Below are positions 2,061 to 30,800 of a DNA stretch of 64,000 nt, one piece after another. Under the pieces are notes generated by a model that saw nothing but the letters and a program-made list of their open reading frames with translations, was not told where the DNA came from and made no database searches. Each line of letters opens with the position of its first letter. Position 1 is the stretch's first letter. The position numbers and the translations under genes were made by a program. Origin of the DNA: Fimbriosthenelais zetlandica. Lineage: Eukaryota. The stretch lies in the NCBI GenBank assembly GCA_977030845.1, contig OZ365110.1, positions 53,010,001 to 53,074,000 on the forward strand, given 5' to 3'.

Positions 2061-5000
2061 TTAAAACCATGCAGAGAAACAGTGCGCTCTCGACAAAAAT
2101 GGAGGGAAATTATCAGACCCTTGCCGGATAATGTAAGGCTTCTTCTAGATCACATTTTGAGCAACGAGCAATGGCTTAGACCTAGCCTAGCCTTGAGCAC
2201 AGATTTGAAGGGAGGGGGTTGGGAATCCGATCTTTGGAACGACTCTGTAGGCTAATCTGTAGGGGCCTAGGCTATTTTTTGATAGACCCTAGGACTATAT
2301 AGAATAGACCTATTAGAGAATTCAGTAGGCCTATTAGGCTACTGGTAGGCCTATTAGAGAATTCCACTGATGGAGGCGTAGGCTAGGCCTAGGGACTGGC
2401 TAGGGCCTAACTAGCCTATCACAGGCCTACAGATCTTCAATGCCCACCAAGCTAGGCCTAAACAAGCCTAGTAGGCCTACAGCTACACGGGGAAGTGAAC
2501 ATGAACGCGTGTTTAGAACACTAGGCCCCGGCTCTAGGCCTAAATGTCGGCCTAGTCCTACTATCGACTATCTCTATTTTATCTGGGTCTACCTCGACAG
2601 GAGTTTGGGCCTAGCTATTGACACATTAGGCCTATTTTATCATGGTGGTCTCAACTTTAGATCTATAGGCCTAGGCCTTGCCATGCTGGCTAGGCTAATA
2701 TGCATGTAAATGTTTTTTAAGAAAAGACTGACAGATGACGGTCATTTCAAGGACAATTGTTAATTTGGCGCTCCAATAAAAATCCGCGAATTTAATTTTC
2801 CCCACAATCACCACATCAAACAAATTAGACATAATTTTTTCAAAGATAACAAAAAATACATAGGCCTAATTTTTCACATAGGCAACTCCCCTTGCTGTCC
2901 ATCCCTCTATGGACGAGTTTTCAAGCGGCTTATTGTTTATTTTAGTAATACACAAAACAGCACGAATGGGAGGAGGTGTTCAAACAAAAAGAGACACACA
3001 AAGCGCCTTTTAGATGCATGCAGGCAGCAGCATGATGAGGGCCGCACTATGACGAGACAGTCCGCGCCAGATGCCAGAATGACGTCATTCTTGTGCTATT
3101 TATAGCTTATCTGTGGCCAGACACACAAGAACCACGACATCGAAAGACATCTGGCGGAAAATCCACCAACTAAACTCGGAATCGTGCACGGTTTTCCTCC
3201 ACGCACTAAAAGTAAATCATACACATGTATTGGGCTACAAATGTGAATAAAAATAAATTAAAAATCATAAAAATTAAAATACAACAAATGTTCTTTCCAA
3301 GATCACTTTATGTCATATTCATAAGCATTAGCAACAATGACAAACTTGTTGCCGAGAAAAAGACATTCCAGGAAATCAAGAAATTAGGCCTATAGGCCTA
3401 ATTCTAGAAGTTACCGGTACAAGTTTAACAATAAGGTATTATGTGTTTCTCCCAGATCGTATCAATTAAGGACGAGACTAGATGGCTACATGGCACCAAT
3501 TATTTAATAAATCATGTATACATAGCCTAAGAATAAATCAGTATACTATATAAAAAATCATACAATTATTTAGACCTAACAGAAATACAGGTTAGCAGAA
3601 AGCATATTTATATGTAAAATGGGTAAATATATATGATTTATCTTTGTTTTTCATCTTTAAATTTCGGTATACCGGTACAAGGAAAAGTAAGCATATACAT
3701 GTACCGTAAGCACTCAGTTATCACATCTGTACATATTAATGTAATTTGGTAATTAGCTTAATATAATTACCGTGAAAAAACCTTTACAAACCGTTTACAT
3801 ATGAATTTACTAGATCAAGATAAGGATAAGACAAATGTGAATTCATTTAGGTTTTCGAACGCACACTACCGGTACCGGTAATTATTGACCAGAGGAAATG
3901 ACCAGTGATGTGAAGCCCTCGCTTGACTCATTTATTCTAATTCTGATGCAAAAAAAAACTAGATTAGACCTAATGATAGATCCTGTTTTACAATGCTAAC
4001 ACTACAAATATTATCACCTTATAATTTCATTGCTGCACATAGAGTCGACAAACGAAAAAAAACCATCTCGATAAGTGACATTTCAGAGAAAAATTGATAA
4101 GAAATATCATGGTAGGAGGTAGCGACCGGGAATCATTCGGCATTTTTTTTTGGTGCAAACTGTTATAACTTGCCGATGTAGGCAGTACTGGTACTGGCTA
4201 TAAAAACTTTTTGTCTAAATTTATATAGACCTATAAGATGAAATATGCATAATTACATATATTAAAAGAGATAGAACCCGTAATACCAGTAACTTTAACT
4301 AGGTAATACATGTACTTTAAAGGCACCAGGTGCTAGGTCAGAAAACCCCTTTTGAAAAAAAGAACTTCTCACTTCTGAGCAACGTGATATATTGTAACGT
4401 TATTGTCGGAGCTCCTTGTGAAAATTCTTTGATTTGTGAGCACTTCGACATTTTAATTAAAAGATTTAGACCAATACTAATATTATAGTACTATTACATG
4501 TATTATCATAATCTTTGAAATCTGAAACCAAACTAGTGCAAACACGTATATCTGCCAATTAGTTACATTTACATACCACCATGATCATAAAGTAACATTC
4601 CTTAGGCAGACATTGTTTTTGATTAACATCTTAACAACTTGATATATTTGACAAGACTGATCAGGACATGAATAAACTAAGAGAACACCATCGTGATAAC
4701 CAGCAGTTTTTGCCTAACGTTACGTACACCTGTGTTGTATCAGAATGTTCACCAAAGGACAAGATTCCGGCATTGTCCAAGGCCAAATGATCTATTCTAT
4801 AACATCCTAGGCGGCCATTAAAAAATTACGGAATACGGTGTTTGGAGGTGCGGTAATGTTGGCCTAGTTAGCATTACGTTGCACTCCAAATGGTAAAACA
4901 TGGCATTTAGTTTTACAGGGGGTTCAGGGTGTCAATTTTTGACGGAAAAAATCGTTACGTAATCTTTTAATGACGCAAACTAAATTCGTTAGAAAATGTT

Positions 5001-5638
5001 AGTGTTTGGGGACATTGACATGGACGTGGTGCCATGAGTTGTGGATGAGGCCTCGGAGGTTCCATATGCCTTCTGCTGACTCAGGCTGGGAGTTATGCGA
5101 GGTGTCCACTGCCTTACACACTAAATCTAACTTCTTGCCCTTCATGTTGTTGGGTATTTTCATGTGTGTCTCCCACAGCGCCCAGCCCCATTCTCGATGC
5201 ATCGGTTGTTTAGTTTTATCCAGATCCGCCACCTCCCACGTTTTCCCACCATCAAGGGAGACATCGACTCGGATGATGCCACGGCCACCGCCACTCCATG
5301 CGTACCCCTTGATGTGCACCTCCTCTGCTTCTTCCAGGGTGGCACCTTCACTGGGCTCGCAAATGGCAGACTGTATGGGGTATTCCTGGATAGCCACTGA
5401 TTTGGTGAAATCCACATTATGCCAGTCGATGGATGGATTAAATTGCTTGTAATCATTCTGCTGCCAGTGACCCTGGCATTCCTTCTTGCTGGTTGTGATC
5501 TTTGACAACCATTTCACTTGACGGGCACCAGCGATTCCTGGAGCGATAATCCGGGCCGGGTAACCATGGTCAAGCGGGAGCGGCTTACCATTCATCTCAA
5601 AAACGATCATCACATCCTTACGAGGGTCAAAAGCAGTA

Positions 5639-8268
5639 CACTGTTAAAAATCCTGGTAATAGCTCACCTCTGGGTAAAGATAATATAACGCGGGGTATAA
5701 AGTTCAGATTTATTAATATTGGGTAGTGTTTTCAGCGGAAAATTGTCATGGTTTCAGGGGTCTTTTACTTCCAACAGCGATTGTTTATCTCTGGGCAAAG
5801 AAACTTATACCCCATTTTACTAACTTCACATTACTATTGACAGCCACCATGTACTAATGCCATAATTACCCTTAATCCTCTCAGTGGCCACTGATGCATG
5901 AAGCCAGCGGCCTAATGCCTAATCCTCCACCTCCCCACCTTAGCTTTTATGGTTATGCATGAGGCTTTGGTGAAATGAATTTCATTTACCACTTTTAAAA
6001 TAATGGTTTCCATTGCATGACATAAAGATGACTTGGAGATGTATTAATTAATTAATTATAATCTATGTTAGAAGCCGAATCTTAAACCCAAGCGTCTCCA
6101 TATCAGGTAAGATGTTTTTGGGAAAGCACAAATTTCCCTCATAAAGCCAGTCAAGCAACGAACATCTTTTTTTTTTAGTTATAATTTTTATAGAACCTGT
6201 TATGGGTGAATACCAGCTCACACTCTTGATTACATGTACTCAAGTTTCTCGTATGATTTTCAGCTGGGGCTCTTTCTATGTTCATTACTACATTGCCTTC
6301 TGTGCAATGGATATTTCTAGAACATGTATAGGCCTATGTACAACCCTGAGGAGGGAGGCATTGGAAATGTCTTGGACAGCTCGGGAGATTGAACCGCCGA
6401 GCCTTCGATCATTGGTCAACCACCCTGTGTGAGCTGGCGCTCCATAACATTTCCATAGTTAAAATGCATACCGGTACCCCACAACCCTCTGGCATTCACT
6501 ATCATCCACATCATTGACTAATACATATTTACAATAATATGTATATGTGCTCATAATAGCACCCAATCAGAGATTAACCACCATGGTTCGATTTAAATCA
6601 AATCTGCCGATTTCAATATTGTCATTATTTTTAATCACTCAGTGATAGTCCGGTGAGTTAATAATATGCCTAAGCATTAGGCATCTTACAATCTAAATGG
6701 CTCCCAGTTACTACCCATGGCCATGATTGGGCTAGGCCCAGCGTGGGGGTTTGTGGAAGTTGGGTAGCTAAGAAAATCGGAAATATTTGTAAGAGATCCA
6801 GTGGGGGTCAACATAAAGGACTAAATGGTTAAATATTTTATTATCAATCCCTAGTTTGTAATGACTAAATTATTAATCGATATACCGCAAAATAGTTTAA
6901 ATAATATACAACCCGACCACCCCTGCAAGCTAGCTAGTACAACCCTTGAATGGACTCACCCAGCCGTTAAAGTGTTACATCATCTTCACCGAGCCGTCTC
7001 TACTAAGGACTTGTCCTGGTTATTTGGAGAGATACATTCGAAGTGACCACAAGTACCGAGTAGGCCTACACACATAGGTAAAAATTTCCTATTCCATTTA
7101 CAATGTTCTATCTTTATAATTGTAGACATATCAGATGGGATGATATTTTCACTCATTTCAACAAATGTAGTTGACATATTATACTCTATATTTTTTTCAG
7201 ATTGATGTGACCAATTAATGCCCGAGAGGTAATTCAAACTGGTTCTGATATTCTGGTGGGTAAAAGAATTTCTTTATTTGTTGAATTTATAACATACGAT
7301 TTTAGTACGGCAACTGGGAAGGTAGTTATCATTGCAATAAAGTGTTATGCTCTGCAATTTGTTTCAGATTCAAGAGAAAGGAAGGCTATAGCCGCTAAAT
7401 CCTAAAATACAGGGAAATGGGACGCATTTGGACAAAAGGGTTAGTACATGTACCTACATGTATCCCACTAACACCCTCGGACTTATCTGCTTGGTGATAC
7501 CAACGAGAGTAAGATAAACCTTATTTTACTCTCGTTGGTGTGACGATTCCCAGGGTGATTTTTCCTGAGGAAGAAGGGAGATTTTGTAAATGTTTTATTC
7601 CTACTGAATAATATTAAACACAAACCTTTGCTCTTCGATTTACAGGTTTAAACTTCACATGGGTTAAGAGACTGGACCTGAACAATAGGCTGGATTACAA
7701 GAACAATAGGCTTGAATCCAGTGTCCCGTCAGACAGGAAGGCGGCCCAACAACAATATAGGCCTTTGTTTCCTGTGACTTTCATCCTCCTGCTTCTCCAT
7801 GTATACTATAATATTATCTTGCAGGAATAGAACAACTCTCCAAACTCCTCAGGAATACAAGGAAGATGTCTCATTAAATACTGATGAGAAAATGATGAAT
7901 TAAGACGAATGAAATTGATGTTGCCCAAAATAAAGATTAATCCTCTACAATAAAGCAGGGAGTGGGGTTGGAGGGGAGGGGGTGTACATTGGTTATATAA
8001 CTATAATCCTTTAATTACCCTATACCCTAAGCTTTCCACCTGCCCCCATTCCGTCACGCCTGGCTGCAGGCACCCGTCATGCTTGGTTGGCCCTGTTAAT
8101 ATTAATCCTTTAATTGGCCTCTCTGCCTCTATAATCGCCACACCTAGCTTTCTTCATGGGGCATAAAAATGGCAGATATAGTTGGGTAGTGAATCCTCAC
8201 CCCTGTCATCGGGCATTGGATTTGGGTAAAGATATCGTTACACCTAGGCGTAATGCTTCATAGCAGTG
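5639..8268. mobile_element. Non-autonomous CACTA/EnSpm-like DNA transposon (2630 bp)
   Basis: Begins CACTGTTAAAAA and ends TTCATAGCAGTG (imperfect TIR, CACTG/CAGTG perfect). Flanked by TA on both sides (5637-38, 8269-70) where the intact SUOX copy has one TA. Subterminal TGGGTAAAGATA-like motifs recur near both ends (~5671, ~8223). No transposase ORF. Confidence 0.8.
6167..6444 (-). mobile_element. tRNA-derived SINE family A, 5'-truncated copy nested in the CACTA-like element
   Basis: Highly similar to 41496-41797, including B-box GGTTCAATC, body and A-rich tail; head truncated. Confidence 0.8.
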
Positions 8269-9647
8269 TAGCGGCCGGGATGGATGCCTCGTAGTGGACA
8301 CCCTCAATGTCTTTATCAAGGCCAGTGAATGTCACATGTTCAACGTCTTCCTCCCTGATTCCAGCATAGGTGAGCACATCACTCAGTTTGACCCCAGTCC
8401 ACTCAGCGTTACTGATGGCATTTGACCCCCAGGAGAGACCCCGTACACCTTTATAGGTGGCCATGTGGGACCTCCTGTTACCAGCACACTGCACCGCCGC
8501 CACCATCTTATGAACAGGGAAGAGCCTCTTGAGCCTGTCCACATTGAAGACCACAGGATTCCTCCAACCCTCTCCTGAAATGGCTATTGAATGGTTCTTG
8601 GCATCAATCTTAGGAACCGGTAGATGATTTCTAACGAAGAAAAGATCATTAGGTGTAAGGTAGGCGTCTGTGAGAAGCTCAGCTGGTGGCTCGGCATTGA
8701 ATGGCTTCTCAGAGTTGACGGTCAATGCAGGATGCCTTTGTGGATCATTAGCAAAAGGATCATTAGCATCAGTAACTTTAACTTTGACTTTGTCATCAGG
8801 ATGGAGGTTACCAATCCTCAGTTCCTCCATTATCTCCAGAACATGGACACTAAAATGCTGGGCGTAGGTGCTGAAGTAAGGCTCCAGAGGCTTGCCAGCC
8901 GCCAGGAGGATTTTCTTTCCTCCTGGATGACCCTCAATGAAGTCCGTGACATTGTAAACCCCGTCTTTGAACGTCACCCAAACGCCGTTTTTCGCGTCGT
9001 TATGTTTTTCTATCTCACTCATCCGGTATGTGGGTAGGTCATCCTTGAAGTTTCCAAAATTATCAGAAGCATGGGCCGCCTCCTTACAGCACTTCGACAT
9101 TTTAATTAAAAGATTTAGACCAATACTAATATTATAGTACTATTACATGTATTATCATAATCTTTGAAATCTGAAACCAAACTAGTGCAAACACGTATAT
9201 CTGCCAATTAGTTACATTTACATACCACCATGATCATAAAGTAACATTCCTTAGGCAGACATTGTTTTTGATTAACATCTTAACAACTTGATATATTTGA
9301 CAAGACTGATCAGGACATGAATAAACTAAGAGAACACCATCGTGATAACCAGCAGTTTTTGCCTAACGTTACGTACACCTGTGTTGTATCAGAATGTTCA
9401 CCAAAGGACAAGATTCCGGCATTGTCCAAGGCCAAATGATCTATTCTATAACATCCTAGGCGGCCATTAAAAAATTACGGAATACGGTGTTTGGAGGTGC
9501 GGTAATGTTGGCCTAGTTAGCATTACGTTGCACTCCAAATGGTAAAACATGGCATTTAGTTTTACAGGGGGTTCAGGGTGTCAATTTTTGACGGAAAAAA
9601 TCGTTACGTAATCTTTTAATGACGCAAACTAAATTCGTTAGAAAATG

Positions 9648-12600
9648 TTAGTGTTTGGGGACATTGACATGGACGTGGTGCCATGAGTTGTGGATGAGGC
9701 CTCGGAGGTTCCATATGCCTTCTGCTGACTCAGGCTGGGAGTTATGCGAGGTGTCCACTGCCTTACACACTAAATCTAACTTCTTGCCCTTCATGTTGTT
9801 GGGTATTTTCATGTGTGTCTCCCACAGCGCCCAGCCCCATTCTCGATGCATCGGTTGTTTAGTTTTATCCAGATCCGCCACCTCCCACGTTTTCCCACCA
9901 TCAAGGGAGACATCGACTCGGATGATGCCACGGCCACCGCCACTCCATGCGTACCCCTTGATGTGCACCTCCTCTGCTTCTTCCAGGGTGGCACCTTCAC
10001 TGGGCTCGCAAATGGCAGACTGTATGGGGTATTCCTGGATAGCCACTGATTTGGTGAAATCCACATTATGCCAGTCGATGGATGGATTAAATTGCTTGTA
10101 ATCATTCTGCTGCCAGTGACCCTGGCATTCCTTCTTGCTGGTTGTGATCTTTGACAACCATTTCACTTGACGGGCACCAGCGATTCCTGGAGCGATAATC
10201 CGGGCCGGGTAACCATGGTCAAGCGGGAGCGGCTTACCATTCATCTCAAAAACGATCATCACATCCTTACGAGGGTCAAAAGCAGTAGCGGCCGGGATGG
10301 ATGCCTCGTAGTGGACACCCTCAATGTCTTTATCAAGGCCGGTGAATGTCACATGTTCAACGTCTTCCTCCCTGATTCCAGCATAGGTGAGAACATCACT
10401 GAGTTTGACCCCAGTCCACTCAGCATTGCTGATGGCATTTGACCCCCAGGAGAGACCCCGTACACCTTTATAGGTGGCCATGTGGGACCTCCTGTTACCA
10501 GCACACTGCACCGCCGCCACCATCTTATGAACAGGGAAGAGCCTCTTGAGCCTGTCCACATTGAAGACCACAGGATTCCTCCAACCCTCTCCTGAAATGG
10601 CTATTGAATGGTTCTTGGCATCAATCTTAGGAACCGGTAGATGATTTCTAACGAAGAAAAGGTCGTTAGGTGTAAGGTAGGCATCTGTGAGGAGCTCAGC
10701 TGGTGGCTCAGCGTTGAATGGCTTCTCAGAATTGACGGTCAATGCAGGATGCCTTTGTGGATCATTAGCAAAAGGATCATTAGCATCAGTAACTTTAACT
10801 TTGACTTTGTCATCAGGATGGAGGTTACCAATCCTCAGTTCCTCCATTATCTCCAGGACATGGACACTAAAATGCTGGGCGTAGGTGCTGAAGTAAGGCT
10901 CCAGAGGCTTGCCAGCCGCCAGGAGGATTTTCTTTCCTCCTGGATGACCCTCAATGAAGTCTGTGACGTTGTAAACCCCATCTTTGAACGTCACCCAGAC
11001 GCCGTTTTTCGCGTCGTTATGTTTTTCTATCTCACTCATCCGGTAGGTGGGTAGGTCATCCTTGAAGTTTCCAAAATTATCAGAAGCATGGGCCGCCTCC
11101 TTACAGTGGGACTCATGTCTTCGCCAGTATATTGAAGCACCTAGAAAATAACCACAGAAAAAAACAATTACAATTGTGGTCAGTTGATTGACAGTTTTTG
11201 TATTGCTAACTGTATTGAGAGGATCTAGCCTACGTCTAATGGTTTATTCAATAAAATGATTTACAATTTGCAGAGTGCGTTCAGGTCAATTTCCATCAAA
11301 ATAAAAGGCGGGCAGTGAGTTGTTTTCCTCCTAACCTCCTAACCCAAAAATATGATAGGTCTATTTATAGATCTGTAGGCCCTATGAGTATACCGGTATG
11401 TGAGTGCCACAATAATACATTCATAAGCATCATGGGAATAACGCTCCAAATGAAACAAAATATTCTGCTCGTAAACAGGTAAAAAACATGAGAACATTTC
11501 TCTCAAAGTACTGACAGTGATACTCTGAGGAAACTTGCTGATAACAACAATACTTATAAACTAAAATTATCTCCATTAGCGTACAAAAAACAAATAGAAT
11601 CGATCTCAATCGGTGAATAAATGTATCTTGTCAATGACTTATAAGTAGCCTATAGTGAGTACAAATCAATGTGGAAATATCAAGAAATGTCCCAACCAAC
11701 GTATAAAGCAGCTCCTTATCTCTATATAATCATACAACGAGTCCCAAATCTAGGACGACAAAAGGGACATTTCTATATTTCCAAGGAGCGCAACGGTAGG
11801 CCTACGTATATATCAGCACGATAATCATCCTTAGCTGACGCAATGGATAGCTACCAGGACCAGGGTAGATTATTTTATTTTCAAGTAAAGCCACTTGAAT
11901 TCAGGTCATGAATGATATATGTATAGTAATAACATTATATGAAACATTAGATTATGTACCGGTACCATGTAAGCCTAAATAAGGTTTGTGGGTAAAAGCT
12001 AACAGGTTAGAAATGTGAACATATCAGGATGAAAGGAACTACCCAGGCCCTGGTAACATTAGCACTTTAGCCAAGATTATATCCCTCGTCACGTTCCACC
12101 TGTTTCAACAGTCAAGGGCTATTGCTACACCTCAAGGACAAATTGACTAAGGCCTATGATCCTATGTCAGGTCTACATAGTTCTATGGTGAGATGATAAG
12201 GAGAAAGAAAAGTAATTGATAATACAGAGATAAAAGTGAGATACCGTATTGAGATAGGCTACATGCTAGTAAGGAGATCAAAGTACCCGGTACTCTACAC
12301 AAGTGACAGCTTCTTATCACCTTTTGTCTTAATGATAAATCCACAAGTTCTCATACAAGATCATACAAACGACAGTGACAGAGGTAGGCCTACCGTAGGC
12401 CTACTGTACACCAAGTCGATCACGATGCAATTAACATGCAATTAATTTACCTATTTACCTACGGTATAAAGTAATGAGCTATGATAGCACTGCGATAGAA
12501 TGATAGATACGGTCTAGGCCTATTAGGCGATAGGCCTAATTTGTTTTTGCACAGGCAAGTAGAGGTGGATATCGTCCTAAAAATATATCTTGATGTGGGA

Positions 12601-18800: not shown

Positions 18801-21800
18801 TTTCTTAATAATAATGTATAGATTCTACCCTGCAATATGAAGCGACCTTGCAACGAAATAGATCTACAATTCAGATGGAAGTGCTCAAAATCTTGATAAT
18901 GTAACTCAAAACACGTTCATTTTAGGATTCCGATCCGTGTCTACCCATGGCATATCAGACTTAAGCCGGGCATCCACCTTTCCGATTTTTGTCGGATCCG
19001 ATTTTGATATTTCCCAAAAAAATCGTACAACAATCTGATCCGATTTGGAACCGATTTTGAGGATCCGATTTCATTTCCACAGTACCGATTTTTCTGGTAG
19101 GATTTTTGATCGGTTCTGGGCAAAATCGGATCCGATCTTATTTCCATATGTCGGATTTGATCGGATCCGATTTTCTACATGGCTGCAAGTCGGTATCAGA
19201 TCATGAAAATCTGATCCGATCTTATTTCCATATGTCCGATTTGATCTGATCGTATCCGAAAATCGGTAGGGGTACCGATTGGGACGAACCAGACCGTCCC
19301 AGTCGGTAGTACATACCGATTTTGATCCGATTTAAAATCGGTATCAGATTGTTATTTCCACCTTTCAGACTCAATTTTCAAACGGATCAGATTTCAAAAA
19401 AAATCTGATCCGATCAATTTTGACCCGATAATCGGATAGGTGGAATCCAGATTGTTGTACGATTTTTTTGGGAAATATCAAAATCGGATCCGACAAAAAT
19501 CGGAAAGGTGGATGCCCGGCTTAAGTTACCGGTACACATAGCAGCCTGATAGTGATAGTAGCCTACTGATACAACACACCCGAGATGGAGTATTCATTCG
19601 CATTGATTGTATAGAGGGTTCCCAGGGACACTTATCGGCCCCGCCCCCTTATGGCGCTCAGCCAATCACGTAGCGTCGTGTCATGATTGACAGCGTCGCC
19701 ATAACGACGACGTCAGCGGACCTCGGTCAAACAACTTGACGCTCGGTCAACGACATCGACGATATCGGCGATGAGCGTTACTTTTCTTTACCTTTGGACA
19801 GCTGACCGGTATAAATAAAGATGGTTAAGAGATGTGCTTATGGGAGGTGCAACTCCGACACCCGTTATCCCGAAAGGGTAGCGGGTGTGGGATTTTTCCC
19901 ATTCCCTAAACCCAAAACGAAGCTGGAGCAATGCTTATCGTGGATCAAGACCTGTGGACGACCACACAGCGACTTGAACATAGGCCTTGTAAATAAGGAC
20001 ACCTACGTATGCTCAAAGGTAAGCATCCGCATTAATTAATAGAAATATTGGCAATGGACAATATTAGCATCCAAAAAGTGAGGCCTATACAATCTTTGTC
20101 ATAGATATCTCATGCTATGGTATGGGTTGTTAAGACCTTGATAACTCGTAGTTACCAGGCACGGTTGGTTGGGCATTTTGAAACAATGTTGCAAAATGTG
20201 ACACCCATGAAATGCAGGGCCCTCCCTCAGTTAGGATCAGTTAGGCCTAAGATCGCCTAACGGATTGCCGGTATTTATAATGGAATGTTTAATTTAAGAC
20301 TTTATAGTTCCGTATGGTGATCGAGAAAAGTAAATATTTTGTCTTTGAATCGCCTTATGAACTATTTGAGCATTCAAATTAGCTGTACCTACCGCTACTG
20401 AAACTAACTTCTAACTAGCCTAGTTACTAGGGATTCTTGGGAGTGCCCTGAAAATGTGACCTAAATCATCAATGTGAGGCTCCACAGCCTTCACATGGCT
20501 TTAGCCTCTAGACTAGAGCCTGAGTAGAGGCCTACAACTGCCTGCTTGTGCATCTCAGAAAGTGCTTTTCCCCAAACACAGGTAGGGCTAGATAGTCATA
20601 TTGTCCTTTTTCCAAATCACAGTACCGGTACACACTAGCTGTGAAGATCATAACCACTATACTACTACTAGACTAGTTTTGTTACTTTGTAGGCCTAAAG
20701 CTCTGGATAATTTTATCTCTAAGTTAACTCTAACCGCTGACGAGCCTAAACAAAATATCATAAGCCTACCAAAATCTACTCTTACAACACATAAGTTTCA
20801 GAGAAACAAATTGTCTACCGTACATTATATTACTCTCGTACTTGTCCTACTACTAGTGTAGTCTTAGTTAAGAGATGGAATCTAGGCCTAGACTACAGCC
20901 CTATACTTTGGATTTTTTTACTATGTATTCGTTCTGCGTGGGGCGATATTACCGGTATTTAATATTTACATTAACTTTATTAGCTTATTTTGATACATTT
21001 ATTTATTATTGGGGAATATGGTACGTTTCATAAATGAAAACAAAATACAATAAACACTAACAATCATAGTATTGGCAATTGCTCATTGTTTATATATATT
21101 TTTATTATACATTCCGAATCATGAGCTAAAATGGACATACGAGTGATTAATATTAACCCACAATTTTTATATAATTTTATCTTAAATATCAAATATATAC
21201 ACACGTTCACAATCAAATATAATATACATTCCAGCACTTCCTGCAGGGACGCCCTACCCAGGAATACCCAGATCCAATACCAGCTGATGGAGCTGAAGTT
21301 AGGCGCACAAGGCGACATATAAAAAGAAGTATTAGTGCTGGGTAGGTTTGCCTCTAGACATGAATTTAAAATTCTCTTAATCATACATCTCATACTTCAT
21401 AGTGAACAGGCTTTATTCACCACATATTCTTATACTAGGACACAATAAACTTTCAGAATTGATGAACAGGAAGGAAAGAGGAGGAAAGATTTAGAGGGAC
21501 AACCAGAAAGAACAGCACTGCCACATTCAGAACAGTCAGGTGGGAAATCATTTTCTGTGATAACAAATATTCAGAAACACGTTTAAACTTCTTTCGCAAA
21601 AATGAAGATATTCATATTCAAGAAATTTACTTCTGTAAAGGTAATATTAGAATAGTAACAGTAAATTACTACCTGTCTGAATAATAACGCTATGTGGGCT
21701 TAAATACATAGGCCCTATAATAAGCTATATTGATCTATATAGACTTACAGTCACTATGTTTTGCTATCAATATGTATGGATCTATCTTATTCATGACATG

Positions 21801-24800
21801 CATTTCCAAGGACGGATAATGACTGAAAAACAATTTATGATGAATGTGCCTCTAAGAAGGGTACAGCATGCTCAACATAAAATTTGTACAAGACATCAAG
21901 CATCATTTGCATGGTGGTTTTATCAGGCAGGATACGCTCAATGTGGAGCCCTTTCCTTGTATACACAATGAAATCGCAAAAGGGTGCCCCAGTGACTAGG
22001 AGTTGACCCTGAACTTGGTAATAATACGTGTGATTTTCAGGCAGCTTGATAAGATCATTTTCATTTCTGAGACAAAAGTTTTTGAGTGACTGGACTGCCT
22101 CCTCAATGGTCAGGTCTCTTGCAGTATATGGTGCCTTTATTTCAATGATGCCTGTCAACCCCTCATCACAAACTTTACCATCAGGTGTAGCCCCCAAAAA
22201 ACTTATAGATGGATTTACTACCAGACCACACCCATGTACATGTACATTCTTCCTCCTCTCACAGTACACCCCTTTAGCTACACACTCCTGGTTTTTACCA
22301 TACGACATGGCTGGCGTCTGTACTGAACGACCAGCAAATAATGATGACAAAAACTTATCGTTTACTGCTTTTTTCCTCTTTATGATGTCGCCAAACCGGG
22401 ACGCAGTTACTCTTCTCCTCCTTTCCTCATGCCACTCAGGCGAGTCGCTCTGACACACCGTCCTCTGCTCCAGTGCTTCGGACTGAGCTTGGGTGATGGT
22501 GACATGTGTAGGACAGGTGGTAGCTAACTGGGGAGGGATATCCACCGGGACCTGGAGTGGGAATCTGGTGACACCACACCTGACGTCTGGGCACGGGTTA
22601 GGACGGTTGAAGAGTGGAAGCTAAAAAAAACAGAAATATTTGTTCTTAACAAATTTGACAACAATTTTTAAATATTTATTATAATTATTATTATGCAGGT
22701 CTTGAGATATTATCTCAGGTGTGTCAGGAGCAACAAGACCACAGTCTCCATCTTCTGGAAACCGCCATTGAAATAAGACAGACACAAGGTGAGAACGACA
22801 TATTGAGGGAAAAACTTGCAAAGAATGAAATAATAGTATCTCAGATGAAGGCCTCTCAGATGAAGGTTGAAAATGATCTCAAAAAACAAGTAGCGGCATT
22901 GGAGCTCAAAAACATCGCCCTCCAGAGAGATATAGCTGAAGCTACAAGACCTCAGCCTGATTCACCTCAGCTAAGTAGTTGCAACCAATGTAAATTATTT
23001 AGCCCTTCCACAGTTGTTACATGTAAGGTCAAAGATTCTCTTGTGTTTTACACTGGGTTTGATTTGCCTACTTTCAAGATTTTATTTAAATTCCTTGTCC
23101 CTCATGAAGGCAAAAACCCCGTGTTGTATTCAGAAAATAAGGCTTCTTCTTTAGACATGTGTTTGGAGTGCCAATTGTTTCTAGTACTTTGTCGTTTAAG
23201 GAAAGGTTTTTTGTTGAAGGATTTGGCTATCCGCTTCAACATCAGTGTTCAGGTAGTTAGTGTAGTGTTTAATAGCTGGATTAGGTACATGTATGTCAGA
23301 CTTGGCTCTCTATCCTGGTGGCCGAGTCGAGAGGTCATAATAGAAAAGATGACTGCCAGGTACAGGGAGGAGTTCCCGACATCTCTTGCTATCATTGATT
23401 GCACTGAGATCAAAACAGAAAAACCATCATCCCTAAAGACCCAGTCACAGTGTTATTCTGAATATAAATCCAGCCCAACTCTGAAGGCCCTAATTGTAAC
23501 GGACCCCAGGGGATCACTGATGTTCACGACCGCATTATTTTCTGGGTCCATTTCTGATAAGGAAATATGTGTGCAAGGTTGTTTTTTCCAGCTCCTAAAA
23601 GAACTTAAAGAAAGTGGCAAAATACAGTCGGGAGATGCCATCATGGCCGACAAAGGTTTTCTTATTGAAGAGAAATTAGGAGAATTGGGTTTACTACTAA
23701 ACATACCACCTCTGTCATCCAAATCACGTCAAATGCCACCAGGTGATGTAGCCTTGACAAAGAAAATAGCTAGTCACAGAATAACTGTGGAAAGAGCCAT
23801 CAAGAGGATTAAGGATTTTAGGATCCTGGACAGACGGATTCCATCCTCTCTTTTCCACAATATAAATGAAATATGGCTTGTATGCACATATTTAACATCT
23901 TTCCAAAATATCCTGATCAAAGAAGACACAGTGCGCTAAATTAAATTAGATTAAAACATAGAACTTGAACCAACGAATTCTCATGATAGATATACCAATC
24001 TAATACATGTATATTTTTCAGGTAAGAAACGGTGGATGTAACTCTTTCAAGGCAAGTCATTCAGAATGTATATCACTGTATGTGTAGAATAACATGATTA
24101 TAACATATTCATATAACCCGTTTTCATTTTACCAGCCGATTTTTACTGGTGCGAGTGACATGAACTGCTCTGTCATTTTCACATAACTCATTATGTACTA
24201 AAAATATCCAAGGGGAAATCCGATAATATGATTAGATACCATATTTATAGATCTATATTTATGAGAGATTATATAGATATTTATTACGTTGGGCTATATA
24301 TATATATTCAAAATTAGGATTTCCCTTTGAATTTCAGTGTATTCATACCTGTGTCATAACCATGTTTGGCGTCTCGTCTTCTAACAAGTTTGTTTGTGGC
24401 TTGGTTAATTGTATCTCTATAAATAATTTCTGTGACTAATCAGCTTACCCAACTCAATTTTAACCAGTATTCAGTAACTGTTAGGGGGCAACCATTATGT
24501 GATTATGTTCATAAACTGATATAAGTATATAGTGTGAGGAGGACGCACTATCGCCTCGTCCCACTAGGTGAGAGCTCAGTGCCTGCCGGTCGCATTATCT
24601 GACCTGACCAGTCACGGTCACTCCACCTCTCACACCACACCTGTCACTTGTATTTTTTTTTATTCATGCAGGGGGGGGGGGGGGGGGGGGGGGTAAATAT
24701 GGCATGGATAAGGAATGATTATCTCGCGTCCTATTTGGGAATTTTAATTGCACCCCTATTTTCTGTGATTGATATCTGACGTATATATGTAATTTAATGT

Positions 24801-27800
24801 GTAATAATATATGTAATAAAAAAACCCAGCTAGACCCGCCGTCCCACCTCCATCTAATGGTCGCCCCTATATCAATTTGTATTCATTCAGGTACATACTA
24901 ATCCTTAACACATATGGAAATTTGATTACCATCTCACTCTGGCATATTTATATGGAAAAGGGTTCAGTCCCCAAACCTTTCCCCTCTTAATCCCTTCTTT
25001 TATAATCTGTGTTCTTTTTTCCTATTCATATTATCAAAGGGACGTGTATGTTATGTGTCCGTGATATTATAAATTGAAGTGAATACCTGGTACTGTAGTG
25101 CTGAACATTTCTGGACTGGTCCGTATTCAGTTTCTACATTAGGCTCGTCCTCAGTCAAGAGGTATGACATCGCTGCCGTCCTTTTTATCTTTAGTTCTCT
25201 GATTTCGTCATTGTTGGCTAGGGGGATGCTGGAAAGTATACACAGTCTATGTACTGATTGGTAATATACACATAAATACAATGTTTAAAATGGACTAAAT
25301 ATGATGTATGTTTACTGTAATGTAGGCCTGCTTTTATGAACCATTTAATGATTAAGTTTGGATGAAATAAAGCAGGCTATAATCATCAGAGTATAAATGT
25401 ATCTTAATATTATTTACCTATGGATAGGGAAATTGGAAGTCACTGGCTTTCGCTTCCTTTCCTTTTCTGTGGCCGGATTGGCCATGACCAGTGATGTCGC
25501 TGGTTCTGGCCGAATGATTTTTCCCCTGGGTTTGTGCCACTGCTGGGGAAGGCTTGTACAGGATAGTGCATCAGGGCACTCAGCCAATTCTTGTTCTTGG
25601 TACTGGACGAGGGTCAAGAACAGTCCTATTACATGGGCACATGACCCTGCGAGACTGAAATAAGAAGGAAGTATTTAATGTTAAAATGATAGCAATGTAA
25701 ATAACAATATTGGTAGAGTGTTTAGGTATATGTTAACTTCTGCATTTCTTTCTGAAGATAATCTTACTAAGTGTACGGTACCTAGCAGGCCAAATATTTC
25801 AAGGTTTAGGCCAGTGCCTATATGAGCCTAAACTTAATTTCTTTTCTGACAATGAGAATATATATAGATCATCTAGTCCTATATTTCGTGTATGTGCCGG
25901 CTTATATATGGCATAAGCTTCGTTACAGACACATGTGTTAATTTAATCAATGGATGGAAAATAATTATTCCCCAAATAAAAAAAAATAGCCCACAAATAT
26001 TATGTCTGTTATTTTTTATTTGCGTCTGTTAACTAAAAAATAGATTGAATTAATGTAGATCTAGGCCCAGTTGAAAAGTTCATGTAGGCCTATAAAAAAA
26101 GGCTTTAAGTTTGAGCCTAGAATAGATGTAGGTAGGCCTACCGTCAAGCCTATTTCAGTACTCTACTACTAGTACTAGTACTACTAGCCTAACTTGGCCA
26201 ATGGAGACCAATATATGATTTTACTGCCTTGCAAAATTACTAGTTCAACAATTATATAGGCCCATTCTGATCAATGTATAATGAACTTAAACCCACACCT
26301 TTATTAAATTCGTTCCCCTTCATTAAACTTTAGGCCTATCTTGACAGGTAGGCCTTCACTAAGCTACAGAACCAGGCTACAAAAGGGGGCGGGGCATGGG
26401 CGGGCGGGGTCGGGGTGGCCCTGGTTTGGGAAGTTTGAGGGAAGCTGTCTGATGATTAAGAGGGAATGAAAGTCTGTCATCATCTTTTAATTATATAATT
26501 GAAATATATTTACCCTATGGTGCAGGAACAGGTGCTAAAAGTCACTTTCCTCTGGATTGTATTGATGTTTAAGTTCACTTTGTGGGGTTGCTCATGTTTT
26601 CTCATGCTCCGGTAGCATTCCGCTTTCACGCTGATGTCTCCCTCCGTTGGCTCCATTCGCACATTATGAATATACCCCAATAACGAATAATTAACTGCCC
26701 TGTCCCTAATCCTCGCTGATATCGCACTTTCAAAAAAATTTAAACTTAAATCCCCCGGCAAAACATCCACCCGCTTTGTTGTCATCTTGACGCTTGACCT
26801 AATAACGCGGCAAACGTCATCGCATACGTCATTGTTTGACCGAGGTCGGTCAGCGTCGTTAGGGGGATTCTACGTCGCTAAGGGGGGCGTGGCTACGCGG
26901 CGCGCTGGGAACCCTCTATTATCGCCCAGACCAAAGCTTCATCCGATATATCTATGTCATTTCATACAGTTACATTAAAATTTTAAATAAATATTCATAA
27001 AATCACACTTGCCACACATTCTCTACATTTGATCATGCCATAAACCCAAGGAGGTTGTCAAGAAGAGTCGAAATAGACTTTGTAGATTTAGGAAACGATC
27101 ATCCCTAAGCTCCATTGTGAAAGGTCAAGGTCACTAAGTCAGTTTACTTTCGTAAAAAAAAAAGTCAGTCAAAATGTGGCCATTGTGAAACAACTTGTAT
27201 TTTAAATTGTATGTTAATACCCCTGCAGTATTTAAATGTTATATTACCGGGATAGTTTTTGGCCAAAAGAAGTGCGAAACGGATCTTGACCACGGAGAGC
27301 TGCAGCCAGTGCAGGTCGCTTTGGAGACCGCCGATATGTCGACTCACTCCACTTCCACACCCCACCAAATCGCAAATAATTAACAAAACCACATAAAAAC
27401 TTGTAAGGATTCAGAAAAATATCCCTAAATCAGTATGGTGATATTTAATTTACATTCAATTCATAATTCTGAACAATATCCATGCAGGATTTGCAGCACG
27501 TCCTCCTGGAGAAAAAACTTGGCACAGTGCCAGACGCATGGAACGTTTGTGACACGGACATGTTAAAATCTAGTTATGGCCAAATAAAACGCCATAAATC
27601 ACGAATAAATAATTTTTAAAAATAAAAATAAATTAGACAGTGCAAATTTACACATGTTACTCCGTGTCGTATTAAGTTTCTATGCATTTATTCCACGGAG
27701 AAATGTATTTTATCATAAGTTGAACTTCAGTGTCAACAGTGAGGTGAAATAAAATCCCGGGCGATACCGGCGCGAGGGCCAAGTTATTGACGGCGCCTGC

Positions 27801-30800
27801 TCGGGCACGTGCCGCCAAGCGGTCACGGGGGCGAGGCGGTCTTGTTACAGTTACGCAACACCTAAGAATATTTAGTTTCACTCGATCTTACGATCTCGAG
27901 AAACGAAATAAAAATTACTTCTAGTCTAAGATATTAGATAGTGGTGTGCCACCTCAGATTGAAGGTCTCTGATCTCTTAGACCTGAATTAACACGGAATC
28001 ACCTAATTTAGAATAGAGGGAATAATAAAGAAATTACCTTAGGAATTAATACATTTGTGTTTGAAATGAATCCTGAATCAGAATCAAATCTAAATAGGTA
28101 GATCAACAATGCATAGTGACAAGCATGAGTTAACTCACCTCTGAATATCATTTTCTGTGAGATCTTGATGAATGGAAGCCACGTAGATACGGTTAAAGTT
28201 CTTGGCCTCCTCTGCCAACCTCTCAATGATAGGCTGAGCTTGTGGCATGTTACTCGGCCTACCGACCTAATAGAGAAAGGAAAATTCACCTCAGCATATT
28301 TTATTCACAGCAAAATAATGTTTTCCAAATGTATATACAAATAATTCTGGTTCACAATATGACTGAATAGGAATTCTTTCTCTATCCACTACCGCAAAAG
28401 GGGTCGGATAATTGAAGAACAATTTTTTTTTTCACAATATGACTGAGTTCCCAGAAGTGAAATTTTTGACGTGAAAATATTTAAGTGAAGTCATATGCCG
28501 CCTACCTTAATATTTCTTCCTCCAATCATGACCCCATTCATCTGTTCCAGGGCCAGGGAAGCAGCCTCTGGGATTTCGTACTCAATAAAGGCAAATCCTT
28601 TGTGTTTGTTGGTGACGGGGTCCCAGGAAAGGCTCACACTTTTGATCGGACCAAAGGGCAAGAAAGCTTGTTTGATGGTGTCTTCCTTGATTTCAAAATT
28701 GATACTTCCGACGTATATTCTACAAAGAAAACATTGGGATTAGATTTCTTCCTTTTTTAGTTTAATAAAATTACAGGATTTCAACTCTAATGCAAGTCAT
28801 TTCTGTAGTACACATGATTCGACTATTACATAATCCATTTCCTCAAATTTCAGAATGTAATTTTTTTTTATTTGCGTTTACTCTGGTTTCTACAATAAAT
28901 TAGTAGGTTTTCTGAACCAACAGTCAATCAGGGGTTTAGATAATTTTTTTCAGACTTGAGTACAGTACGCACCTCTTTACACGAACTTGCGTACAGTATA
29001 ATTTTTTTGTGCCCTTAGGTTTTGCTTAATTTATTCCTTCAATGTCAAATGGAATACACAGATGGATTTGGCACAGTAGACTACATTGTGTCAAGAATGT
29101 GTGCCTTATTAGGACCTGTTAAATGGTTTTTATATGCCTATTTGACGTAGCTTCAGATTAAAGAAAGTTATGGTACGCTTTCTAATGGAAAATCACTGCG
29201 TATTGTACGCCTAGCACAAGATCTGATGATGCGTATTTAGTGAGTGGGGAAGCGTATATACGCAAATACGCACGTTATCTAAATCCCTGGCCAATTCTTC
29301 CAAGTTATAAATCCATTCTAATTTGCTAGCTATATATAATTAATTACCTGTGATACCTGTGTAATAATATTGTAATTCAACTGACCTGCACATGAGTGCC
29401 AATGCCTGTTGTCGTTGGACTGTGTTCTGGAAGTTGAGCATCTGTTGTTGTTGATGGGCTATCGTCTGTTTCACCAGTACGCTCTTGATGCTTTGCTCCA
29501 TGGCGTACTTCTTGGCTTTCTGCACCGCCTCTTGCTGGTCGGTCGTAAGTTTGGGTAGTAGGAAGGGCTTCATGCTTTGTTTAGCTTCGTCGGATCCGGC
29601 CATGGGCACCTCTACAAAACCAAGACGAGAGTCAGAAGCCTGTTATCTATCACCATGGGGGCACTGCCTGTATTAAGGGAACTGGACTTACGTCGCATAG
29701 ACGTATGACGTGCTAGAGAGCGCCCAGGGTAAGGGAGGGTAATTATATCCCCCTTTATAATTAATTAAGTGGAAATGTCCCAAATGATACCCTAAGCTTG
29801 ACAGATTTAAAGGGGTTTTGGACTACCCAAGGCCCGGGGTTCCAGACCCCATTTCCCAGTCAAAAAAGAAAATTTGTTTTTTCCGCAGTGCTCCCCATGA
29901 AGATCCATTACTCCAAGTTTTTAGACAAATCGTTACCCTCTACTAAAGCAGTAGACCCCAACATCTAGGAAAAGGATTTTTAGAGAACAAGAGAATCCAT
30001 TACTTGTCCCTGTGTTTTGTCCCCAATAACCCAGGACTCTCTTTTTTCCTAGATTTCCAAACCCTTTGTGGATGGATTACTCAAACACCGCAGGAACCAA
30101 TAACATGGTACCATTTTGCCCTCACTTTGAGGTATTTTTCCACCAGTGGGTTTGGGTGATAGTATGTGAAAGTTGATGCGGGCAGGGCTAATGGAATGAT
30201 GCAGACACGATGGAGAGTGTGGTGTAGTAACATTGAATGGAGAATAAAATAGAAGTAGAGATATATATAGTATCGGCCGTGGGCAACTCAATCTTTACCG
30301 AGTGGCTGGTCATGTTTGTCACTGACGTTGGGAGCTGGTGCCCCATTCTGACTGAGTAGCTACAACCGTAAGTTGGCGGTGCCTACTTAATCCCCATTCT
30401 TTCCACGTCTCAAATTGCACCTCGCATTTTGGTCCGGACTGAATACATAAAAACACAGAAAAAGAGAAAAAGGAAAGAAATAAAACACATGTTAGACCAT
30501 GGGCGTCTCAGTCCGGGAAGGTAGGAGTACACACAATGCAACATCAGCTGTGGGAATGTATATTGACCCAACACGGGGCAGCAAGCGACAGTATCTCAAT
30601 AGACAAGATCATGTAGCAGTGTGAAAGATTATCAAAATCAATCAACTTTCATCCTATAACAGAATAGGCAATTTTTTTCCAATCCTTCACACAACTTCAT
30701 TTGTTATTCATATCGATACAAATACTTACTCTTTGGTATACTAGACATTATATAGTTACACTTTTAGGTATTTTAGCCACTTTTAACTTGTTTAAATACG

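What the first reader, a model, noticed from the sequence alone, without database searches (positions are those of the whole stretch)
19613..26917. Intact two-gene transposon whose convergent genes are mutually interleaved
The YqaJ-like gene's 786-nt last exon (22620-21835) lies in the last intron of the transposase gene. The transposase's 1241-nt catalytic exon (22699-23939) lies in the last intron of the YqaJ-like gene. Each transcription unit therefore runs antisense through the other's catalytic exon, giving about 2.1 kb of obligatory overlap between pre-mRNAs. Both ORFs splice without stops or frameshifts, the TIRs are perfect and the AT TSD is intact, so the element may be young or active. 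Transposase plus YqaJ is known for ISL2EU, but I do not know of a description of this reciprocal nesting. It could act as built-in expression control (polymerase collision, dsRNA/piRNA source) or lock the two genes against separate deletion.
Basis: partly seen in the sequence, partly recalled or inferred. Interest (0 to 1): 0.85.

Follow-up and report, generated by a model that had tools for sequence, protein, structure and literature searches.

The report
Transposon with two mutually interleaved genes
This is an intact ISL2EU-type jumping gene whose transposase gene and exonuclease gene run towards each other with each one's main exon sitting inside the other's last intron. I found the same odd layout in a whole branch of this family (oysters, abalone, a fish, amphioxus), and no paper I could search describes it.

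Summary
Window 19613-26917 is a 7,305-bp ISL2EU element with perfect 13-bp TIRs and AT on both flanks.

- **Transposase gene (+ strand):** three exons, 19821-20018, 21235-21328 and 22699-23939. It encodes a 510-aa THAP-HTH-DDE transposase.
- **Exonuclease gene (- strand):** four exons, 26785-26514, 25654-25418, 25228-25087 and 22620-21835. It encodes a 478-aa SWIM-YqaJ exonuclease.
- **Interleaving:** all introns are GT-AG and both frames stay open. Each catalytic exon lies in the other gene's last intron. The two acceptors face each other 78 bp apart.

The layout is not peculiar to this copy. The same exon order occurs in Branchiostoma, Coilia grayii, three oysters, Haliotis and several metagenome contigs. 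On a transposase tree these elements form one clade (UFBoot 100 / SH-aLRT 99). The other 48 classifiable relatives have the simple convergent layout; the two whose ORFs I read are intronless.

In Magallana gigas, a 1,616-nt RNA-type contig matches the genome in four blocks and splices over the antisense YqaJ exon. RefSeq models in Saccostrea and Haliotis splice over the antisense DDE exon.

No sequencing run was listed for this genome. Junction use, activity, copy number and any regulatory role are therefore untested here. I found no published description of the layout; Repbase could not be consulted. The scan's first readers noted other THAP-DDE plus YqaJ elements elsewhere in this genome; I did not examine them.

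The parts
19611..19612 (.). Left AT, putative 2-bp target-site duplication
   Evidence: Sequence. Matches the AT TSD published for ISL2EU (PMC4482050). No empty site was available.
19613..19625 (+). Left terminal inverted repeat, 13 bp perfect
   Evidence: two hits in the window, 0.08 expected. pair I2.
19626..19820 (+). Left subterminal region and presumed transposase promoter. GC-rich, with two tandem 20-nt CTCGGTCAA-type repeats at 19722-19761.
   Evidence: GC 0.50 against about 0.38 nearby. Direct repeat D1. An inverted copy lies at 26832-26859 (I4). The promoter role is inferred.
19821..20018 (+). Transposase exon 1 (ATG, first part of THAP zinc finger), donor GTAAGC
   Evidence: Pfam THAP E=1.9e-5. 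tblastn of full-length homologues, residues 1-66..
21235..21328 (+). Transposase exon 2 (end of THAP, HF..GRPT..PDPIPA motif). Acceptor ttccag, donor GTATTA. An alternative in-frame donor follows 21334.
21835..22620 (-). SWIM-YqaJ exon 4, the last exon, 786 nt including the stop. It holds the lambda-exonuclease-like PD-(D/E)XK domain and lies inside transposase intron 2.
   Evidence: Pfam YqaJ E=1.7e-15 and Viral_alk_exo E=6e-9. Acceptor ttttttttag. The PDG...EIK motif aligns with homologues.
22621..22698 (.). 78-bp AT-rich spacer. It carries the 3' splice signals of both introns, one on each strand, so the acceptors face each other.
   Evidence: Comparable short spacers occur in several relatives (ORF-extended gaps of -12 to 92 bp in four of the seven relatives measured).
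22699..23939 (+). Transposase exon 3, the last exon, 1,241 nt including the stop. It holds a coiled-coil linker, HTH_Tnp_4 and the DDE_Tnp_4 catalytic core, and lies inside SWIM-YqaJ intron 3.
   Evidence: Pfam DDE_Tnp_4 E=2.6e-38 and HTH_Tnp_4 E=2.3e-13. The family-invariant D227, D311 and E358 are present.
23940..23955 (+). Two ATTAAA polyadenylation-type hexamers directly after the transposase stop
   Evidence: A motif match only.
25087..25228 (-). SWIM-YqaJ exon 3 (linker with the ..SYLL..G..S.LQYQ motif), bounded by AG and GT
   Evidence: Aligns with P0147, P0134 and P0315.
25418..25654 (-). SWIM-YqaJ exon 2 (second half of the SWIM finger C-x-H, and the [10 protein letters not shown] motif)
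26514..26785 (-). SWIM-YqaJ exon 1 (ATG, N-terminal domain, C-x-C of the SWIM finger), donor GTAAAT
   Evidence: 123 homologues at E<=1e-3, many of them 90-100-aa ORFs ending at this same boundary.
26786..26904 (-). Right subterminal region and presumed promoter of the SWIM-YqaJ gene
   Evidence: Inverted copy of the left subterminal motif (I4). The promoter role is inferred.
26905..26917 (-). Right terminal inverted repeat, 13 bp perfect
26918..26919 (.). Right AT, putative target-site duplication

Best explanation
Window 19613-26917 is a structurally intact, autonomous ISL2EU (PHIS / PIF-Harbinger-related) cut-and-paste DNA transposon. Each terminus is followed by an inward-facing gene.

The left end leads into a 3-exon gene for a 510-aa THAP-HTH-DDE transposase. 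The right end leads into a 4-exon gene for a 478-aa SWIM-YqaJ (lambda-exonuclease-type) protein.

Relative to the simple convergent arrangement of most relatives (THAP-DDE forward, then YqaJ-SWIM reverse; intronless in the two I read), the two catalytic 3' halves have changed places. Each is now the terminal exon of its gene and lies in the last intron of the other. The two acceptors are back to back, 78 bp apart. Making either protein therefore requires transcribing the antisense of the other's catalytic exon and splicing over it.

Shown here: the anatomy, its conservation, and use of the splice pattern by the transposase gene in an oyster relative.

Inferred: the layout arose once in an ancestor of this subclade. 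One possible route is duplication of the central module followed by complementary loss, tolerated because other copies can supply the proteins in trans. It has since been kept because almost any internal rearrangement or deletion destroys both genes.

Most likely functional consequence, not shown: at least 2.1 kb of complementary nuclear pre-mRNA, giving transcriptional interference or small-RNA production that damps expression. The mature mRNAs themselves share no complementary exons.

The exonuclease most likely resects DNA ends during excision-site or transposon-end processing. Its role is unknown in the literature.
For: Termini and TSD.

Domains.

Exon models with GT-AG borders and open frames.

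Colinearity with an intronless A-type element (L044: 521-aa THAP-DDE ORF and 597-aa SWIM-YqaJ ORF, 335-bp spacer) and with contiguous-ORF contigs L003 and L005.

Same exon order THAP+ / YqaJ- / DDE+ / SWIM-: Branchiostoma L001 and Ostrea edulis L002; Coilia grayii L004; GCA_965363235.1 L006; Magallana gigas L088; Saccostrea L089 and Haliotis L090; metagenome contigs L010-L012.

RNA-level evidence in a relative: Logan contig L003 matches the M. gigas genome at 99.6-100% in four blocks. Its last intron (7972-9175) contains the antisense YqaJ exon.

RefSeq models P0378 and P0385 join SWIM exons to the YqaJ exon across an antisense DDE exon. In Branchiostoma, the YqaJ gene is annotated inside the THAP-DDE gene.

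Phylogeny: all 11 interleaved rows lie on one side of a branch (UFBoot 100 / SH-aLRT 99). One change suffices in 100% of 200 bootstrap trees, and 0 of 500 label shuffles did as well.

ISL2EU definition from PMC4482050, PMC4122938 and PMC9179366.
Against: There is no RNA, small-RNA or population data for this genome; no run was listed. Junction use in this copy therefore rests on homology and splice consensus.

The transposase exon-2 donor is ambiguous and weak (GTATTA or GTGCTG).

This family's copy number in the genome is unknown, so 'active' is unsupported.

The tree is unrooted. 'Simple to interleaved' is inferred from the midpoint root and from the intronless genes of L044, a member of the sister group.

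The fish element's YqaJ domain groups with simple-layout elements. An AU test rejects one clade for the interleaved YqaJ domains (p=1.5e-5). A single clean origin of the whole arrangement is therefore not secure.

Nothing here tests any regulatory effect. The interleaving could be selectively neutral.
Confidence: 0.85

Rival explanations
1. The interleaving is real but functionally neutral. It is a frozen rearrangement that persists only because it cannot easily be undone, with no effect on expression, silencing or copy-number control.
For: Relatives with the simple layout are more numerous in the survey: 48 against 13 relatives plus the window copy. Interleaving is therefore not needed for the family to succeed. 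The mature mRNAs share no complementary exons.
Against: The layout survives across elements whose transposases are only 45-63% identical, in hosts from molluscs to a teleost. In four of the seven relatives measured and in the window copy, the ORF-extended gap between the two catalytic exons is under 100 bp. Neither point proves selection.
Confidence: 0.4
2. The two central exons are expressed on their own from a bidirectional promoter in the 78-bp spacer. On this view the THAP and SWIM exons are separate small genes or relics, so the genes are not truly interleaved.
For: Automatic annotation sometimes calls them this way: a 232-aa single-exon YqaJ gene in Branchiostoma and a separate 169-aa THAP gene in Saccostrea. 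The DDE exon has an in-frame ATG upstream of its HTH domain.
Against: In the window, the YqaJ exon has no ATG before the middle of its domain. The spacer carries a pyrimidine tract plus AG on each strand. Reading frames join exactly to the upstream exons and restore the C-x-C...C-x-H SWIM finger and the CSK|HF THAP motif. The M. gigas RNA contig is spliced from THAP to DDE. Intronless relatives encode the same full-length fusions.
Confidence: 0.05
3. The locus is a domesticated or immobile single-copy relic, not a mobile element. Its intact ORFs would then reflect host function.
For: Only one copy is visible in the window. Copy number in the genome could not be measured.
Against: Both perfect TIRs and flanking AT are retained. 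Both genes are kept, with their subterminal repeats. Relatives are multi-copy: the M. gigas cluster has several RefSeq loci and 167 contigs for one ORF variant. First-reader notes report other intact THAP-DDE plus YqaJ elements in this genome (unchecked).
Confidence: 0.07
4. The arrangement is an assembly artefact, or a chance nesting of two independent elements.
For: None specific.
Against: The same exon order occurs in eight independent genome assemblies, counting the window, and in metagenome contigs. A single TIR pair encloses everything.
Confidence: 0.01

Closest known systems
ISL2EU group of the PHIS (PIF/Harbinger-ISL2EU-Spy) superfamily, as described in Repbase and in Han et al. 2014/2015 (PMC4122938, PMC4482050) and PMC9179366
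   Same: DDE_Tnp_4 transposase with HTH and an N-terminal THAP domain. A second gene with a YqaJ exonuclease domain. A 2-bp AT TSD, short TIRs and an animal host.
   Different: Published descriptions speak of 'two ORFs' and draw two separate boxes. None of the texts I could search mentions introns, strand or nesting. Here the two genes are split into 3 and 4 exons and reciprocally nested. The TIR starts AG rather than the usual GG. At 7.3 kb it is longer than the reported mean of about 4.8 kb.
Simple-layout ISL2EU relatives (for example Porites lobata L007 and metagenome contig L044)
   Same: The same two proteins, THAP-HTH-DDE and SWIM-YqaJ, on opposite strands and converging.
   Different: In the two I read (L044 and L007), each catalytic gene is a single intronless ORF. 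They lie tail to tail with a spacer of about 330 bp and do not overlap.
PIF/Harbinger elements
   Same: A related DDE transposase and a two-gene design in which a second protein is needed or presumed needed.
   Different: The partner is a Myb/SANT DNA-binding protein, the TSD is TWA, and there is no THAP or YqaJ (PMC4482050).
Maize MuDR (mudrA/mudrB) and En/Spm (TnpA/TnpD). From my own knowledge, not tested here.
   Same: MuDR has two convergent genes, each driven from a terminal repeat. En/Spm has coding sequence of one product lying in an intron of the other.
   Different: The MuDR genes are not nested. En/Spm nesting is on the same strand and works by alternative splicing. Neither shows reciprocal antisense nesting.
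Interleaved or nested host gene pairs in animal genomes (general phenomenon). From my own knowledge.
   Same: Exons of one gene lie in introns of another on the opposite strand.
   Different: Here both partners belong to one mobile element, the nesting is reciprocal, and it involves the catalytic exons of both.

Membership tests
ISL2EU | DDE_Tnp_4-type transposase with an intact DDE triad | tested here: met
   Pfam PF13359 E=2.6e-38. Family-invariant D227, D311 and E358 are present in the window protein.
ISL2EU | N-terminal THAP zinc finger plus an HTH ahead of the catalytic core | tested here: met
   PF05485 E=1.9e-5 on exon 1 and PF13613 E=2.3e-13 on exon 3. The spliced protein is colinear with THAP-DDE homologues.
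ISL2EU | Second gene encoding a YqaJ-type exonuclease | tested here: met
   PF09588 E=1.7e-15 on the minus strand. The PD..EIK motif is conserved.
ISL2EU | 2-bp AT target-site duplication (target A|AT|T) | tested here: met
   AT on both flanks. The outer flanks are T and T rather than A and T. No empty site was available to prove duplication.
ISL2EU | Terminal inverted repeats of 6-259 bp, usually starting GG | tested here: inconclusive
   A 13-bp perfect TIR is present but starts AG. The M. gigas relative starts GG. 'Usually' is not a strict criterion.
ISL2EU | Transposase groups with Repbase ISL2EU references and apart from Spy and PIF/Harbinger | not testable with these tools
   Repbase and Dfam are not available. 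The transposase does group with THAP-DDE plus YqaJ elements of oysters, amphioxus and a fish.
Interleaved subclade of ISL2EU (defined here) | Exon order THAP(+) / YqaJ(-) / DDE(+) / SWIM(-) with acceptors back to back | tested here: met
   The same order is seen in L001, L002, L004, L006, L088, L089, L090 and L010-L012.
Interleaved subclade of ISL2EU (defined here) | Transposase falls inside the clade that holds all interleaved elements | tested here: met
   The window is sister to Branchiostoma L001 (100/98), inside the clade supported 100/99.
Active (currently mobile) element | Several near-identical copies, insertion polymorphism, or transcripts in this genome | not testable with these tools
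   No run was listed. The by-sequence look-up was blank.

The most novel reading that the evidence does not exclude
The reciprocal nesting is a selected device. By forcing each gene to be transcribed through the antisense of the other's catalytic exon, the element would generate nuclear dsRNA or piRNA precursors in proportion to its own expression, which is self-limiting copy-number control. It would also tie the two genes together so that neither can be lost alone. On this reading the design arose essentially once and has persisted or spread across molluscs, cephalochordates and teleosts, surviving even exchange of the exonuclease module (the fish element).
Probability: 0.2. Interest if true: 0.8.

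Novelty: new variant of a known kind. Interest (0 to 1): 0.55.

Why it matters
**A distinct architecture within ISL2EU.** ISL2EU elements are described in the literature simply as 'two ORFs'. This work shows that one well-supported branch of the family, present in oysters, abalone, amphioxus and a teleost, has a different and stable gene architecture. In it the catalytic exons of two convergent genes are reciprocally nested.

**A natural test case.** Closely related elements with the ordinary layout exist as built-in controls. That makes this a ready-made system for asking whether convergent, mutually intronic transcription regulates a transposon.

**Annotation errors explained.** The layout accounts for recurrent mis-annotation. 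RefSeq pipelines split the THAP exons into a separate gene in Saccostrea, call a SWIM-less single-exon YqaJ gene in Branchiostoma, and truncate the Ostrea model.

**An evolutionary puzzle.** How two catalytic halves changed places without changing strand is unexplained. So is the fish element, which keeps the layout but carries an exonuclease with a different history.

**A caveat on novelty.** If Repbase CDS annotations already list these joins, the novelty shrinks to the clade-level analysis.

Tried and rejected
- **RNA and DNA reads for this genome.** I ran two sequencing-run searches, one on the whole element for RNA and one on the 2.1-kb core for any kind. None was listed, so read laying could not be used.
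- **Other copies in this genome.** The by-sequence look-up in earlier findings was blank and the word search for nesting was blank. The place look-up only gave unchecked first-reader titles.
- **A sixth junction or extra transposase exon.** I enumerated all AG...GT segments that keep the frame between exon 2 and 22699. The best candidates lie antisense inside the YqaJ exon and have poor donors, so I rejected them.
- **Pfam on SWIM exon 1.** There was no hit. The SWIM assignment rests on the C-x-C-x7-C-x-H motif restored by splicing, and on a UniRef name for homologue P0134.
- **Expected congruence of the YqaJ tree with the DDE tree.** This was rejected for the fish element.
- **Tandem repeats inside the element.** None found.
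- **Literature.** Five full-text searches and three key papers were read for the words nested, intron, overlap, orientation and antisense. Nothing was found on ISL2EU gene layout.
- **Host identification.** I did not attempt it, because the capped protein searches were better spent on the element.


Full report
**1. What is in the window**

The 13-mer AGAGGGTTCCCAG occurs exactly twice in the 64-kb window, at 19613-19625 (+) and 26905-26917 (-). Chance expectation is 0.08, and none of 100 shuffles gave two hits. AT lies immediately outside both copies. Beyond the 13 bp the arms are only about 71% complementary.

A subterminal motif (CTCGGTCAA...) is repeated twice in tandem at 19722-19761. It occurs once, inverted, at 26832-26859. 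The left end is GC-rich compared with its surroundings.

Pfam assigns these domains:
- THAP to 19821-20018 (+)
- HTH_Tnp_4 plus DDE_Tnp_4 to 22719-23936 (+)
- YqaJ and Viral_alk_exo to 21838-22545 (-)

**2. Gene models**

I mapped full-length THAP-DDE and SWIM-YqaJ homologues from the protein search onto the window with tblastn. I then read the splice sites directly.

| Gene | Strand | Exons | Product |
|---|---|---|---|
| Transposase | + | 19821-20018, 21235-21328, 22699-23939 | 510 aa |
| SWIM-YqaJ | - | 26785-26514, 25654-25418, 25228-25087, 22620-21835 | 478 aa |

- All introns are GT-AG and both frames stay open.
- An equally in-frame transposase exon-2 donor follows 21334.
- Two ATTAAA hexamers follow the transposase stop.
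- Splicing restores the CSK|HF motif of the THAP finger and the C-x-C-x7-C-x-H SWIM finger.
- The whole of each protein aligns colinearly with homologues.
- The family-invariant D, D and E of the transposase, and the PD...E-x-K motif of the exonuclease, are present.

I find five coding junctions rather than six, and a search for a further exon gave nothing credible.

**3. The interleaving**

Transposase intron 2 (21329-22698) contains the last YqaJ exon (22620-21835). SWIM-YqaJ intron 3 (25086-22621) contains the last transposase exon (22699-23939).

The two acceptors are back to back, 78 bp apart. Each strand of that AT-rich spacer has its own pyrimidine tract and AG.

The transcription units must overlap antisense over at least 21835-23939, which is 2,105 nt. 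The exons themselves do not overlap, so only the pre-mRNAs are complementary, not the mature mRNAs.

**4. Is this peculiar to the copy? No.**

I fetched loci encoding homologues and mapped the six window exon translations onto them. The order THAP(+) / YqaJ(-) / DDE(+) / SWIM(-) recurs in the following places.

| Source | Locus |
|---|---|
| Branchiostoma | L001 |
| Ostrea edulis | L002 |
| Coilia grayii (teleost) | L004 |
| Assembly GCA_965363235.1 | L006 |
| Magallana gigas | L088 |
| Saccostrea cucullata | L089 |
| Haliotis cracherodii | L090 |
| Metagenome contigs | L010-L012 |

- Contigs L008, L009 and L022 are compatible with the same order.
- A Logan contig has the two catalytic ORFs head to head, 38 bp apart.
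- In Branchiostoma, the public annotation already places a YqaJ gene inside the THAP-DDE gene.
- The ORF-extended gap between the two catalytic exons is under 100 bp in four of the seven relatives measured, and 38 bp in the window copy by the same measure.

**5. The other layout**

Porites lobata (L007) and 47 metagenome contigs show the plain convergent arrangement: DDE(+) followed by YqaJ(-) and SWIM(-).

In L044, a member of the group closest to the interleaved clade, both genes are single intronless ORFs separated by 335 bp. They are a 521-aa THAP-DDE ORF and a 597-aa SWIM-YqaJ ORF.

So the same two proteins are encoded in two architectures.

**6. Phylogeny**

I built a maximum-likelihood tree of 80 DDE domains (IQ-TREE, LG+C20+F+G4 PMSF).
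- All 11 interleaved rows fall on one side of a branch (UFBoot 100 / SH-aLRT 99).
- One change of layout suffices in all 200 bootstrap trees.
- None of 500 label shuffles did as well (quick tree).
- The window's transposase is sister to the Branchiostoma element, at 63% identity.

The tree is unrooted. The direction (simple to interleaved) is inferred from the midpoint root, the paraphyly of the simple layout, and the intronless genes of L044 in the sister group.

The YqaJ-domain tree is only partly congruent.
- Window, Branchiostoma, Ostrea and L010 form a clade (99/94).
- The fish element's YqaJ groups with simple-layout elements (98/96).
- An AU test rejects one clade for all interleaved YqaJ domains (p=1.5e-5).

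This suggests either module exchange within the interleaved frame or a second origin. I did not resolve which.

**7. RNA-level evidence (in a relative)**

P0023 belongs to a 90%-identity cluster that contains M. gigas RefSeq proteins. Its 1,616-nt Logan contig (L003) matches the M. gigas genome at 99.6-100% in four blocks: 6916-7198, 7542-7683, 7859-7971 and 9176-10252. It is therefore a spliced transcript.

Its last intron (7972-9175) holds the antisense YqaJ exon (8848-8135). The SWIM exons lie beyond the DDE exon.

For the other gene the evidence is weaker:
- RefSeq models of 481 aa (Saccostrea) and 487 aa (Haliotis) join SWIM exons to the YqaJ exon across an antisense DDE exon.
- An 1,843-nt ENA contig carries a contiguous 508-aa SWIM-YqaJ ORF.

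For this genome no run was listed. Junction use in this copy remains inferred.

**8. What it is and how it works**

By every testable criterion this is an ISL2EU element: a THAP-HTH-DDE_Tnp_4 transposase, a YqaJ partner, an AT TSD and TIRs. This matches the published description (PMC4482050, PMC4122938, PMC9179366). Placement against Repbase references could not be tested.

The transposase presumably excises and inserts the element. The SWIM-YqaJ protein is a lambda-exonuclease-type PD-(D/E)XK nuclease. It most plausibly resects double-strand ends at the donor site or on the excised element. The literature states that its role is unknown.

The interleaving forces antisense transcription of each catalytic exon. 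The most likely consequences are transcriptional interference or nuclear dsRNA and small-RNA production, and a physical coupling of the two genes. None of this is shown, and a neutral 'frozen accident' is a serious rival.

**9. Origin (inference only)**

Going from the simple to the interleaved order swaps two adjacent segments without changing their strands. A single inversion cannot do that.

A tandem duplication of the central DDE-forward / YqaJ-reverse module would produce the order. It would need to be followed by loss of the outer copies and recruitment of splice sites. Intermediates could survive on proteins supplied in trans by other copies.

**10. Novelty**

Full-text searches for ISL2EU, YqaJ with THAP or SWIM, and nested or interleaved genes found no description of this layout. 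The three papers that define the group speak only of 'two ORFs'.

The layout is nevertheless implicit in RefSeq gene models, and probably in Repbase CDS annotation, which I could not consult.

I therefore rate the element as a new member of ISL2EU, and the architecture as an undescribed, clade-wide variant of a known kind. It is interesting to transposon specialists but not categorically new.

**11. Earlier notes of this scan**

These are unchecked first-reader notes. One covers the same stretch (s1-210732). Three others report intact THAP-DDE plus YqaJ elements elsewhere in the same genome (s1-217075, s1-184613, s1-189679). I could not examine them. They suggest the family is not single-copy here, but they are not evidence.

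Noticed in passing
window 19000-19485: A MITE-like unit lies about 130 bp to the left of the ISL2EU element. It has 38-nt perfectly complementary terminal arms (19000-19037 and 19448-19485) 410 nt apart, with several internal GATCGGATCCGAT-type inverted repeats.
   Followed up: no
L004 (Coilia grayii) 8001-12468: This fish element is interleaved, and its transposase sits inside the interleaved clade. Its YqaJ domain, however, groups with simple-layout elements (98/96), and an AU test rejects one clade (p=1.5e-5). That points to exonuclease module exchange or a second origin of the layout. The element lies in an intron of a Cpn60/TCP1 gene.
   Followed up: partly
L088 (Magallana gigas) 5996-11698: The oyster ISL2EU (6915-11203, TIR starting GGTCGGACAT) is inserted inside a LINE-like element. 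Its endonuclease-type ORF ends at 6934 and its RT-type ORF resumes at 11141. The spliced RNA contig L003 starts at 6916, the second base of the element. Transcription therefore starts at the very terminus or reads in from the LINE.
   Followed up: partly
L001, L002, L089 (public annotations): Automatic gene models are repeatedly misled by the layout. Branchiostoma has a SWIM-less 232-aa single-exon YqaJ gene. The Ostrea model lacks SWIM exon 1. Saccostrea has the THAP exons as a separate 169-aa gene and no DDE model. A JGI record names the oyster-type YqaJ ORF (P0377) 'roadblock/LC7 domain-containing protein'.
   Followed up: no
window 19707-19761 and 26832-26859: The subterminal motif CTCGGTCAA(A)C occurs twice in tandem about 110 bp from the left end and once, inverted, about 60 bp from the right end. 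These are candidate binding sites for the THAP or HTH domain.
   Followed up: no
window 4441-11106 and 30299-30438: Other first-reader notes place a SUOX tandem duplicate and a PUF60 exon on either side of the element. I did not determine the element's position relative to host genes.
   Followed up: no
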